NCBI GenBank assembly: GCA_907165135.1
Contig: OU015569.1
Coordinates: 8,308,001 to 8,372,000 of the forward strand
Source: Oikopleura dioica
Taxonomy: Eukaryota; Animalia; Chordata
Direction of reading: 5' to 3'
Length of the DNA: 64,000 bases
A program made the position numbers and the translations under genes. Below the pieces are notes generated by a model that worked only from the letters and a program-made list of their open reading frames with translations, had not been told where the DNA came from and searched no databases. The stretch's first letter is position 1. Each line of letters opens with the position of its first letter. Positions 28,350 to 31,668 of this stretch are shown here, in pieces.

Positions 28350-29237
28350 ATGAACAAAATCATCGAAAAAGTGCGTTCGCGGAAGCCTTCGCCCGGAGGA
28401 GGCTCCGAATCCAAGACGCCGTCAAAAAGTGCGAGCCTCTCCAGTCTCAATATCTCCTCGACGAACACACTCGGTTACGGAAACCTGCGCTGCGCAGTGG
28501 CCTTGCCAGAAGGTGAAGATCTCAATGAATGGATCGCTTACCACATTTCTGATTTCTACAAGCAGGTACGGCCAGTGGAACGCGTTCTTTTCAGATGTTT
28601 TAGAGAGGTTGAAAGACTTCGATGCTCTACGGCGCCATTCTGCCCACATGTACGACTGCCAAGTGTCCAACCATGTCAGCGGGGAAACATTGGGACGGGC
28701 TTTTCTTTCTACCAAATTATTTATTTTCAACTCATTTTCAAAGCTCGAGGAAAGTTATCTTTGGCAAGAAGTGTCCGGCTCCCAGCCGAAGCCGCTCCCA
28801 GCAGCAGAATACGTTGACAAGTAATTTTTCTCGTTTTCTCTCTATATTCGATGACTAACTTGAAGCGAAGTTTGATGACGTGGATCAACGAATTACTCGA
28901 GGATGAGAAGATGTTCCCCTCAGCTATCAATGTGCCTTTCCCAGCACAATTCCGCGACAATGCTTTTAAAATCATAAAGAGACTCTTTCGAGTTTACGCT
29001 CACATCTACCTCCATCACCTCCAGGTTAGAATCGCAAAAAAATACACTGTTTTGTCTCAAAATAGAGAACTAAGACTTCGCTCTAAGGATGTTCGGGAGA
29101 TGAAGATGGAGCCTCATCTGAACTCGAGCTTCAAGCACTTCATTTTTTTCGTGCAGGAATTCCAGCTCATTTCCTCAGAAGAACTCAAACCACTGCAGGA
29201 GGTAATCGATGTGCTCACCAAAAAAGTTCCCTGCTAG
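28350..29237 (+). CDS. MOB kinase activator (MOB1-like)
   Basis: [25 protein letters not shown]; CPTMSAG; VPFPAQF...[16 protein letters not shown]; [19 protein letters not shown]...ELKPLQEVI. Confidence 0.92.
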
Positions 29238-29553
29238 TTTCTTCCCTTTTAATCTTTCCAAGAATTTTACTATCTTTCGAAGATGCTGTTTATCAAACTA
29301 CTGCTTTCTGTGATCTCATTCTAAATCAAGTCGCTCCAGCACAAGAATACGCTATTAGTTTTCGTTTCTTCTTTATCTGTAGCCTTCCTTTTGACTGGAT
29401 ATTTTTGTGATTGCTCATTCTTTTTTGATTTCTCTGTTCTGTAACGTTCCGAAAATTCAGCTTTTAAAATTGTTCGATTCAAAGTTCCTTTTTCCTCTTA
29501 CACGCGTGCTTATAAGTTCCATTTTTAAGAAATTCGCCATTTTGAAAGAAAAA

Positions 29554-30963
29554 ATGGATTGGGGTATCGAAAATGACGAAGAAACATGGAGCGACGATGA
29601 CAAAGACGAAGAAATGGCAACGATGACAGTTGCAGATATTCTAGTTCTTCTGATTTCGGGCGATCTTCTCCCTACAGAAGACACGAAAAGGCTTGTTTTC
29701 AGAGATAGCTTTTCATTTTCGCCAGATGAGACGCTCGCAACTCTTTTTTTCGATGATATCCCTCCTCCTTCCAACCAGCTGCTCACCGATGCTTTGATCC
29801 ATTTTGTGTCAAAAAACGAATATCTCAAAATTTCCGAATTTCTGCGGCTTTCTCCTGTTGACGCGAACAATCTTTGGTCGAATGGGGATCTCGCCGTTCA
29901 CAGAGCAAAGTCGGTGGAGGCCCTCAAAAGGTTGAGACAAGGTGGAGCTAATCTTCTGCTTGAAAATGACGAAAAGAACAGCCCTCTCTCCCTTGCTCTC
30001 AGATCTGGAAACTCCCGAATGGCCTCTTACATTCTCTCATTTGCTGAAGACGAAGGCTCTCTGATCAATCAGCCATCTACAAAACAGTCTGGTTATTTGG
30101 AGATATTAGAATACTTTTTGCGAATTTTCGAAAATAACGATATGGACAATCAAGGGATTCACACAACCCTGCGACTCTTCAAAATGTCACTCACTTCATT
30201 TAATAGATTCGGATTAAAAGCGTCTGAATCTGACAGAGAAACAGCTCTTTCGTCTATTTGTAAGGCTGTAAATTCAAAAGAAATCTCAGAATCGGCAGTT
30301 TACGACGCCATTTACGATCAATACCCTGCTGATATTGGGAAACTCTTTGAAGAAATCATTTCTTCTTTACTTTCGGAAAGTCCTGGTGTTTTTGATGAGC
30401 CTGAATCTGATAATCTTGGCGCAAAAGCTGGCGCGAATTCTCCTCCATCGCCTGAAAAAACCCGTCGAGTTATGGAAGTAGAGAGAAACTTTGAGCATCT
30501 AGATCACACTGCTGATATTCAAATTCATTCGTGGGGAAATTCGCTAGAAGAAGCGTTTGAAAGTGCTGTGCTGGGAATGTTCGACTATTCTGTTCCATTA
30601 GAAAAAGTCGATCCACGCAAAATGATCATCATCGACTCGAGGGCGAAAAAGGGCTCAGATTTAAAAGGTTAATCTCATTTATTCTTGATCTTCTCAACCA
30701 GCAATTTCCTAGACATTCTTTTCCTTGTTATGCAGGACTGTTTGTACGAAGCCGCTACGGATCCTTACTTCATGGCTAGAGAAGCTAAAGTGCTCAGCCT
30801 CGACCGAGAGAAATGCAGCTGTAAGATGCAGCTGAAAGGGGAGGAATTCGATCTTCAGAAGCATGGCGGATTCGGAACAGAAGTTAAAGCCGTCACACAC
30901 TCAGCACTAAATATTATTGAAACAGAAAAGAAAAGCGAAGTTTGGGTCATCGTCGATATCTAA
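29554..30963 (+). CDS. Ankyrin-repeat / archease (RtcB cofactor, ZBTB8OS-like) fusion
   Basis: One stop-free frame runs from MDWGIEND through ankyrin-like NGDLAVHRAKSVEALKRLRQGGANLLLENDEKNSPLSLALRSGNSRMASYIL into archease FEHLDHTADIQIHSWGNSLEEAFE. After one short intron it ends ...GTEVKAVTHSAL...VWVIVDI*. Confidence 0.88.
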
Positions 30964-31062
30964 ACATTTTCTATTTCCTGCAGCCAAATATCTTGTTCGT
31001 TCACTGAAAATGCCTTCAAAAGAAACCAATTTTAACGTTTGGCGTTCTTAAGAGATAGTCAA

Positions 31063-31668
31063 ATGTTACGGACTAGTGTTATTCGTCGATCTCTATCATT
31101 ATCAACACAATCGATGGTTCCTGGTAGAGTTCCGTTCTGGAGAAAAGGCACAAAAGGTGAACCAGAGCCAAAAACAACAGTCAAGAGGCCCGAGTACGAA
31201 GAACACATCGACTTATCGATGCCTCACAATCGGCAAATCAAAGTAATTGACAGTAGATTATCTTCATTTTAACGAAAAATTAAGGATGGCAAACTAATCG
31301 TCAAACGAAAAGGTGACGACTGGAATGACTACACTTTTGGCGCAGAGAACGCTCGCAACACCGATCCGCTCTTTCTCTCCAAAACAGTTATGGTCGACAA
31401 TCCTGAAGACCCTGCTTCTGTTGCCATGGCGTTACAAAAATTTGAACAGTCAGTTTCTCAGAATTGTTGAAAAATTATTATTTGTTTCAGGTTTCAAACT
31501 CGTGAAGGAATAAACAGATACTACGGGTATGGATACAGATTTAAAGAAGGCAATACACAGAAACGGCGAAGGCTAGCTTATAACGAAGTCAAAAAGACGG
31601 CAAGAGATGAGCTTAAACGTAAAATTGCTTTTACTATGTTAATGCGCCAACGTTCACAGTCTGATTAA
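31063..31668 (+). CDS. Mitochondrial ribosomal protein bS21m (MRPS21)-like with an N-terminal extension
   Basis: FLSKTVMVDNPEDPASVAMALQKFEQ|FQTREGINRYY...QKRRRLAYNEVKKTARDELKRKIAF compared with MRPS21 FIARTVMVQ...[25 protein letters not shown]; presequence MLRTSVIRRSLS. Confidence 0.7.

What the first reader, a model, noticed from the sequence alone, without database searches (positions are those of the whole stretch)
29554..30963. Ankyrin-archease fusion in one uninterrupted reading frame
Seen in sequence: 306 codons (acidic start, about 2 ankyrin-like repeats, helical region, Pro/Ser linker) run without stop or intron into a complete archease that starts at Met 30472 and keeps DHTAD and the C-terminal ...VKA...VIVDI. 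Established: archease is normally a stand-alone protein of about 140-170 aa that activates RtcB in tRNA splicing and XBP1 mRNA ligation. I know of no ankyrin fusion but could not search. Inference: the added module could tether the RNA ligase complex to a new partner or compartment, and internal SL trans-splicing might yield both long and short forms.
Basis: partly seen in the sequence, partly recalled or inferred. Interest (0 to 1): 0.78.

Follow-up and report, generated by a model that had tools for sequence, protein, structure and literature searches.

The report
Ankyrin-repeat domain fused to archease
This is a real two-exon gene in which a roughly five-repeat ankyrin domain is joined by a floppy linker to a complete archease (the helper that switches on the RNA ligase RtcB), and relatives carrying the Oikopleura spliced leader keep and express the same long form, so these animals probably make their archease only as this fusion.

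Summary
The fusion is real, but the frame is not uninterrupted. Exon 1 (29554-30667) runs without a stop from the start codon through the linker into the archease domain. A 45-nt GT..AG intron (30668-30712) holds an in-frame TAA at 30670. Exon 2 (30713-30963) finishes the 454-aa protein. An environmental RNA contig confirms the splice.

The archease part passes Pfam's threshold and keeps the DHTAD aspartates, the conserved lysine and the ...VDI end, whose free carboxylate binds metal in the human RTCB-Archease structure.

The N-terminal part scores below Pfam's ankyrin threshold here but above it in distant orthologues. A 14-sequence AlphaFold model gives about five ankyrin repeats (aa 73-276). 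It also shows a disordered Trp-acidic N-terminus and a disordered, fast-evolving linker.

The same architecture occurs in at least five deep lineages, including Oikopleura dioica CBY24274.1 / E4XF86 (467 aa, named only "Protein archease"). N-terminal dN/dS is about 0.1.

RNA contigs from four lineages carry the O. dioica spliced leader 10-15 nt upstream of the long-form ATG. One has the full leader and one ends in poly(A).

Met 30472 is not conserved, so a short trans-spliced form is unsupported. No stand-alone paralogue was found. What the ankyrin module binds is unknown.

The parts
29554..30667 (+). Exon 1: start codon, N-terminal module, linker and the first 62 residues of the archease domain (aa 1-371 plus the first base of codon 372)
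   Evidence: Open frame. The N-terminus MDW... is conserved in all orthologues.
29557..29604 (+). Disordered Trp-acidic N-terminal motif, [DE]-W-G/A-x(3-8)-W-S-acidic (aa 2-17)
   Evidence: Conserved in every lineage. AlphaFold pLDDT is about 30.
29770..30381 (+). Ankyrin-repeat solenoid, about 5 degenerate repeats (aa 73-276)
   Evidence: AlphaFold model: pLDDT 81-96 for aa 110-280 and 53-63 for aa 71-110. Z about 11, rmsd 2.8 A over 143-146 residues to DARPins and tankyrase ARC. All top Foldseek rows are ankyrin proteins. The profile search hits ankyrin proteins down to E 7e-23. Pfam Ank_2 is 22.4 bits here but above threshold in orthologues P0011, P0160, P0162 and P0188.
30394..30480 (+). 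Disordered Pro/Ser/charged linker (aa 281-309), which includes the non-conserved Met 307 at 30472-30474
   Evidence: pLDDT below 50 from aa 284. Identity to O. dioica is 30%, with in-frame indels; linker dN/dS is 0.59 against 0.07-0.11 in the flanking domains. The Met is absent in other lineages.
30481..30667 (+). Archease domain, N-terminal part, with DHTAD at 30502-30516
   Evidence: Pfam PF01951, 52.6 bits, model positions 1-52. Aligns to human archease 5yz1/8btx at E 1.7e-13.
30668..30712 (+). 45-nt GT..AG phase-1 intron holding an in-frame TAA at 30670-30672
   Evidence: Spliced orthologues. Same position in L003. An RNA contig joins 30667 to 30713.
30713..30963 (+). Exon 2: rest of the archease domain (Lys 430 at 30886-30888, Asp453-Ile454 at 30955-30960) and the TAA stop at 30961-30963
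   Evidence: Pfam PF01951, 48.8 bits, model positions 59-136. Aligns to the very C-terminus of human archease.
29524..29531 (+). Candidate spliced-leader acceptor (TTTTTAAG) 22 nt upstream of the ATG. This is inferred only.
   Evidence: Sequence. In relatives the SL is joined 10-15 nt upstream of the homologous ATG. Not shown for this species.
28350..29237 (+). Upstream Mob1/phocein gene (context: conserved neighbour)
   Evidence: Pfam PF03637. The same neighbour lies upstream in L001, L003 and the distant L008.

Best explanation
One gene (29554-30963, two exons) encodes a 454-aa protein with four parts. These are a disordered Trp-acidic N-terminus, an ankyrin solenoid of about five repeats, a disordered linker of about 30 residues, and a complete archease domain.

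Shown: the mRNA for the long form is the mature product in relatives (spliced leader, then ATG, ANK, archease and poly(A)). Both modules are under purifying selection. The fusion predates the split of at least five deep lineages, all of which use the Oikopleura spliced leader where a 5' end is available.

Inferred from the human RTCB-Archease structure: the archease moiety works as in other organisms. It docks into the RtcB active-site groove. It supplies the DHTAD Asp, the conserved Lys and the C-terminal Asp-Ile carboxylate to the third metal and the GTP gamma-phosphate, which allows RtcB guanylylation and multiple turnover. Because the C-terminal carboxylate must stay free, an added domain can only sit at the N-terminus, and that is where it is.

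Inferred, not tested: the ankyrin module and the N-terminal Trp motif are protein-binding elements held on a flexible leash. They raise the local concentration of archease at a partner, which could be RtcB or its complex, or a localisation factor. The fusion is probably the only archease of these animals.
For: Gene model.

Archease identity and key residues: (52.6 and 48.8 bits against a cut-off of 25). Searches align it to human archease up to the last residue. (PMC10944509) shows that Mn(C) is bound by Archease D51, D178 and the carboxylate of I179, and that K156 contacts the phosphate.

Ankyrin module.

Conservation: full-length fusions P0001, P0003, P0169 (O. dioica), P0160, P0162, P0163 and P0188, plus genomic loci L002, L006, L007 and L008. 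Between deep lineages the N-terminal part is 26-33% identical and the archease part 51-67%.

Selection: for L001 against L003, dS is about 0.44. dN/dS is 0.107 for the N-terminal part, 0.066 for archease and 0.59 for the linker, and linker indels are in frame.

Expression of the long form: the spliced leader (sequence from PMC6883708) lies 10-15 nt before the long-form ATG in L009, L012, L013 (all 40 nt) and L014, which ends in poly(A). In the window's own species, RNA contigs cover 29779-30134 exactly and 30512-30667 with the splice.

No stand-alone paralogue: among proteins of 80-255 aa, no full-domain hit exceeded 45% identity. The nearest hits are fragments of fusion genes.
Against: No read or contig of the window's own species crosses the linker-archease junction. 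The raw RNA runs labelled with the species name gave no reads at all at 92% identity or more, so they were uninformative.

The window protein's own Pfam ankyrin score is below threshold. The structural Z of about 11 lies in the range that the tool warns can arise for any helical repeat.

The partner of the ankyrin module, and any effect on RtcB, are untested.

The search for a stand-alone paralogue is limited by its word index and could not scan this genome itself.
Confidence: 0.78

Rival explanations
1. Two products from one locus. Besides the long form, internal SL trans-splicing at the AG at 30468-30469, or internal initiation at Met 30472, yields a conventional stand-alone archease of 148 aa. 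This short form does the RtcB job, and the long form does something else.
For: Met 307 lies four residues before the conserved ERNFEHLDH, and an AG sits two bases upstream of it. The organism's relatives trans-splice.
Against: There is no Met at or near this position in O. dioica (P0001, P0003, P0169), P0160, P0162 or P0163. In those lineages archease can therefore only be made as the fusion.

All four SL-bearing RNA contigs start at the long-form ATG.

No SL-joined contig for the internal site was found in the metagenome collection. The control for the 5' site was also blank, so this negative carries no weight.
Confidence: 0.1
2. Annotation artefact. Two adjacent operon genes, an ankyrin protein and archease, merely look fused because the upstream stop was lost in this assembly or the frame is open by chance.
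For: These genomes have tightly packed genes and polycistronic transcripts. L001 and L009 RNA contigs span two genes.
Against: The frame is open across the junction in every lineage, despite a linker that has only 30% identity and changes length by whole codons. Single RNA contigs run from the SL through both domains to poly(A). An independent O. dioica reference gene model has the same 467-aa product.
Confidence: 0.02
3. The ankyrin module is an intramolecular regulator rather than a tether. It would mask the archease tip or its N-terminal strand until a signal or partner releases it. Alternatively it has a separate role unrelated to RtcB and is fused only for co-expression.
For: Human archease shows N-terminal strand swapping, and only the monomer fits RTCB. 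A bulky N-terminal domain could therefore influence that equilibrium. The ankyrin domain is under purifying selection of its own.
Against: The linker is long (25-35 aa), disordered and poorly conserved. That fits a leash better than a defined intramolecular contact. No data bear on it directly.
Confidence: 0.1

Closest known systems
Human archease (ZBTB8OS; PDB 8BTX, 5YZ1; in complex with RTCB 8ODO/8ODP)
   Same: The archease domain aligns over the full domain to the last residue. P0001 aa 313-458 gives E 4e-34, and the window's exon pieces give E 1.7e-13 and 7e-14. The DHTAD Asp, the Lys of EVKA(V/I)T and the C-terminal Asp-Ile are all kept. These are the residues that PMC10944509 places at Mn(C) and the phosphate.
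   Different: Human archease is 167-179 aa with only a short flexible N-terminal tail. This protein has 306 extra N-terminal residues that form an ankyrin solenoid plus a linker.
Oikopleura dioica CBY24274.1 / UniProt E4XF86 'Protein archease' (467 aa)
   Same: It is the orthologue, with the same architecture, the same intron position and the same upstream Mob1 neighbour.
   Different: It is only 60% identical in the N-terminal module and 89% in archease, and synonymous sites are saturated. The window therefore comes from a clearly different lineage. E4XF86 has no Met at the linker-archease junction.
Peptide-binding ankyrin domains (DARPins, tankyrase ARC, ANKRA2/RFXANK)
   Same: These are the best structural matches to aa 73-276 of the model. 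Z is about 11 with rmsd 2.8 A over 143-146 residues. Foldseek TM-scores normalised by the target reach 0.63.
   Different: Sequence identity is 13-16%, and Foldseek E-values are only 0.01-0.08. The repeats here are degenerate, with long insertions in repeat 4. No specific ankyrin family could be named as the donor.
Archeases with long low-complexity N-terminal extensions (P0006-P0009, P0164-P0168; for example Sycon ciliatum 'protein archease-like', 217 aa)
   Same: The extension sits at the N-terminus only, and the C-terminal ...DI end is kept.
   Different: Those extensions are low-complexity and carry no Pfam domain. Here the extension is a folded, conserved ankyrin domain.

Membership tests
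Archease (Pfam PF01951) | Profile match above the curated threshold over the whole domain | tested here: met
   Exon pieces score 52.6 bits (model positions 1-52) and 48.8 bits (positions 59-136) against a cut-off of 25. Spliced orthologues score 109-128 bits over positions 1-136.
Archease (Pfam PF01951) | N-terminal metal-binding Asp in the DHTAD motif (human D51 in isoform-1 numbering) | tested here: met
   LDHTAD at 30499-30516 aligns to human LDHTAD. Its role comes from PMC10944509.
Archease (Pfam PF01951) | Conserved Lys (human K156) and a C-terminal Asp-Ile whose free carboxylate binds the metal (human D178, I179) | tested here: met
   EVKAVT and ...VIVDI followed directly by the stop codon align to human EVKAIT and ...VIIDI at the chain end (roles).
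Archease (Pfam PF01951) | Stimulates RtcB guanylylation and multiple-turnover ligation | not testable with these tools
   This needs a biochemical assay.
Ankyrin repeat (Pfam clan CL0465: Ank, Ank_2, Ank_4...) | Profile match above the curated threshold | tested here: not met
   The window protein scores 22.4 bits for Ank_2 against 27.3, and 18.3 bits for Ank_4 against 22.7. The threshold is met in homologous modules of distant orthologues. P0011 scores Ank_4 48.3 and Ank_2 38.5. P0160 scores Ank_2 35.4, P0188 scores Ank_2 33.1 and Ank_4 28.0, and P0162 scores Ank_4 30.5 and Ank_2 28.4.
Ankyrin repeat (Pfam clan CL0465: Ank, Ank_2, Ank_4...) | Stacked helix-turn-helix repeats of about 33 residues forming a solenoid | tested here: met
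   AlphaFold model from 14 sequences: pTM 0.65, pLDDT 81-96 for aa 110-280 and 53-63 for aa 71-110. Z is about 11 with rmsd 2.6-3.0 A over 143-146 residues to five-repeat DARPins. Every top Foldseek row is an ankyrin protein. Caveat: the tool notes that a Z under about 13 can be generic for helical repeats.
Ankyrin repeat (Pfam clan CL0465: Ank, Ank_2, Ank_4...) | Homology to bona fide ankyrin proteins by profile search | tested here: met
   The profile of the N-terminal module hit 290 proteins at E<=1e-3. Most are long proteins matched in many stretches, at E down to 7e-23, on profile positions of about 84-210. The three that were sampled are ankyrin proteins by Pfam.
SL trans-spliced mRNA of Oikopleura type | The 40-nt spliced leader joined upstream of the start codon | tested here: inconclusive
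   This is met in relatives L009, L012, L013 and L014 (SL sequence from PMC6883708). It is not shown for the window's own species.

The most novel reading that the evidence does not exclude
In the SL-bearing, Oikopleura-like clade the ankyrin-archease fusion is the only archease. Its ankyrin and Trp-acidic module would then be a lineage-specific adaptor that docks the RtcB activator onto the ligase complex or onto a compartment. It could take over a job done elsewhere by accessory tRNA-ligase-complex subunits. If so, the fusion would act as a 'Rosetta stone' pointing to a so far unknown physical partner of archease.
Probability: 0.2. Interest if true: 0.7.

Novelty: new variant of a known kind. 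Interest (0 to 1): 0.45.

Why it matters
Archease is known as a small stand-alone cofactor that binds RtcB only transiently. How it is brought to the ligase in cells is poorly understood.

Here a whole animal clade has made its archease for a long evolutionary time as a fusion to a protein-binding ankyrin domain, and apparently has no stand-alone copy. That is a natural experiment. It shows that a large N-terminal cargo is compatible with archease function. It fits the structural requirement for a free C-terminus. The ankyrin domain and the conserved Trp-acidic tail also give a handle for fishing out partners of the RNA-ligation machinery.

The finding is a lineage-specific domain fusion, not a new mechanism. 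The gene model has been sitting unremarked in public databases.

Tried and rejected
1. Raw RNA reads of three 2026 runs labelled with the species name (X7-X9): no reads at 92% identity or more anywhere in 29100-31300, not even on the Mob1 3' exon. They probably come from a different cryptic lineage, so they are uninformative.

2. Scans of the metagenome collection for SL joined within 30 nt of the archease start, and for SL joined within 30 nt upstream of the long-form ATG as a control: both blank. The negative for the internal site therefore carries no weight.

3. First AlphaFold run with five close orthologues: pLDDT 42.8, unusable. It was replaced by the 14-sequence run.

4. Foldseek against the PDB gave no row at E<=0.001. 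The ankyrin assignment rests on the agreement of several weaker lines of evidence.

5. Literature: no paper holds both 'archease' and 'Oikopleura'. Papers holding 'archease' with 'ankyrin', or with 'domain architecture' and 'fusion', are unrelated.

6. The search of earlier findings: nothing on archease or RtcB in this genome.

7. A donor for the ankyrin module: the profile search found only generic ankyrin proteins outside the clade.

8. The spliced 454-aa window protein has no reference, so it was never handed to the search tools as one sequence. Its two exon pieces and the full-length orthologues were used instead.

Full report
**Observation**

Frame 1 from ATG 29554 is open to 30669.

The title does not hold. 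An in-frame TAA lies at 30670-30672. It sits in a 45-nt GT..AG intron (30668-30712, phase 1) that splits the archease domain. Removing the intron gives a 454-aa product.

The splice is supported three ways:
- Spliced orthologues read ...SDLK-D-ILFLVMQ....
- The genomic orthologue L003 has a 40-nt intron at the same codon.
- A poly(A) metatranscriptome contig that matches the window ends at 30667 and continues with the eight bases of 30713-30720.

**The archease part**

Both exon pieces pass Pfam's threshold for PF01951. They score 52.6 bits on model positions 1-52 and 48.8 bits on positions 59-136, against a cut-off of 25. Both align to human archease structures, the second piece up to the last residue (orthologue).

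The human RTCB-Archease structures (PMC10944509) show how archease works. It contributes D51 (in DHTAD), D178 and the terminal carboxylate of I179 to a third Mn ion. K156 and D178 contact the phosphate. All of these residues are present here:
- DHTAD at 30502-30516
- Lys 430 at 30886-30888
- Asp453-Ile454 followed directly by the stop

A free C-terminus is thus part of the active site. That explains why the extra module is N-terminal.

**The N-terminal part**

In the window protein Pfam's ankyrin models stay below threshold (Ank_2 22.4 against 27.3 bits, aa 83-162). A language-model search pointed to ankyrin proteins.

A profile of the module searched against 1.8 billion representatives gave 290 hits. 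Most are long, many-stretch ankyrin proteins, with E-values down to 7e-23. The search also found distant orthologues of the whole module, and in these the ankyrin models do pass threshold:
- P0011: Ank_4 48.3 and Ank_2 38.5 bits
- P0160: Ank_2 35.4 bits
- P0188: Ank_2 33.1 and Ank_4 28.0 bits
- P0162: Ank_4 30.5 and Ank_2 28.4 bits

With five close sequences AlphaFold failed (pLDDT 42.8). With a 14-row alignment spanning the lineages it gave pTM 0.65. pLDDT is 81-96 for aa 110-280 and 53-63 for aa 71-110. Residues 1-72 and 284-306 are disordered.

The folded part superposes on five-repeat DARPins and tankyrase ARC domains, with Z about 11 and rmsd 2.6-3.0 A over 143-146 residues spanning aa 73-276. 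All top Foldseek rows are ankyrin proteins, though none reaches E 0.001.

**Conservation and selection**

Full-length fusions exist in at least five deep lineages:
- the window
- the O. dioica group (P0001, P0003 and P0169, which is CBY24274.1 / UniRef100_E4XF86 'Protein archease', 467 aa)
- P0160
- P0162 and P0163
- P0188

Genomic loci L002, L006, L007 and L008 show the same order of parts, interrupted by small introns.

Between deep lineages the N-terminal module is 26-33% identical and archease 51-67%. The window is 60% and 89-91% identical to the O. dioica group, with saturated synonymous sites.

Between the two closer O. dioica-group sequences dS is about 0.44. dN/dS is 0.107 for the N-terminal module, 0.066 for archease and 0.59 for the linker. 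Linker indels are whole codons. The frame has thus been kept open across a fast-evolving linker, which excludes a chance or mis-joined frame.

A Mob1 gene lies directly upstream in the window, L001, L003 and the distant L008.

**Expression**

No read of the window's own species crosses the junction. The environmental run X1 gave an exact contig over 29779-30134 and the spliced contig over 30512-30667. The three raw-read runs carrying the species label gave nothing at all, even on Mob1. I take that as lineage mismatch, not silence.

In relatives the evidence is direct. RNA contigs L009, L012 (O. dioica group), L013 and L014 begin with the 3' part, or in L013 all 40 nt, of the O. dioica spliced leader given in PMC6883708. 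The leader is joined 10-15 nt upstream of the long-form ATG. L014 runs to a poly(A) tail. The long form is therefore a mature trans-spliced mRNA.

**The short-form idea**

Met 30472, preceded by an AG at 30468-30469, could in principle start a stand-alone archease. However, that Met is absent in O. dioica, P0160, P0162 and P0163. In those lineages archease can only be made as the fusion.

Scans for SL joined near the internal site found nothing, but the control for the 5' site was also blank. I put about 10% on a minor short form in this species.

**Is it the only archease?**

A search with the archease domain alone among proteins of 80-255 aa found no full-domain hit above 45% identity. The closest hits are exon fragments of fusion genes.

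A search among proteins of 252-801 aa found, apart from these fusions, only archeases with low-complexity extensions.

Both searches are limited by the word index, and I could not scan the rest of this genome. 'Sole archease' is therefore likely but not shown.

**Mechanism**

Shown: a conserved, expressed ANK-linker-archease protein with an intact archease active surface.

Inferred from the human structure: it activates RtcB guanylylation in the usual way.

Inferred without a test: the ankyrin domain and the conserved disordered Trp-acidic N-terminus ([DE]-W-G/A-x(3-8)-W-S-acidic) bind a partner and hold archease near it on a flexible leash. Autoinhibition, or an unrelated second role, cannot be excluded.

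**Novelty and score**

The protein is a certain member of the archease family with a new architecture. The architecture has been in public databases since 2010 under the bare name 'Protein archease'. I found no paper that discusses it.

It is a lineage-specific domain fusion and not a new mechanism. It would interest the RtcB field as a lead to archease partners, and it is otherwise a modest finding.

Noticed in passing
window 29557-29604 (aa 2-17); the same motif in P0001, P0003, P0160, P0162, P0163, P0188, L006, L007, L008: A conserved disordered N-terminal motif has two tryptophans 3-8 residues apart in an acidic stretch: [DE]-W-G/A-x(3-8)-W-S-[DEG]-[DE]-[DE]. It looks like a short linear binding motif. 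From memory, Trp-acidic motifs of this kind are recognised by several adaptor proteins. The partner here is unknown.
   Followed up: partly
window 28350-29237; L001:1-435; L003 upstream of 1165; L008:661-1004: A Mob1/phocein gene lies directly upstream of the ANK-archease gene on the same strand, in the window and in three other lineages. The RNA contig L001 spans the Mob1 3' end, the 243-nt spacer and the whole fusion gene. This could be a polycistronic precursor or an assembly join.
   Followed up: partly
L009:1516-5106: In one relative the SL-bearing RNA contig continues 100 nt after the archease stop into a second ORF of at least 1197 aa. This looks like a polycistronic transcript. The window has a different downstream neighbour, a small ORF from 31063 with no Pfam hit.
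   Followed up: no
window 29100-31300, runs X7-X9: Three 2026 bulk RNA-seq runs carrying the same species label as the window gave no reads at 92% identity or more on the three genes of this stretch, apart from two partly laid reads per run at 31098-31171. The window protein is only 60% (N-terminal module) and 89% (archease domain) identical to the O. dioica reference protein. The species label probably covers deeply diverged cryptic lineages.
   Followed up: no
L013:1-8: The metatranscriptome contig L013 starts with ACATGGGG before the complete 40-nt spliced leader. This looks like the tail of a template-switch oligo, so the contig probably represents a full-length capped cDNA.
   Followed up: no
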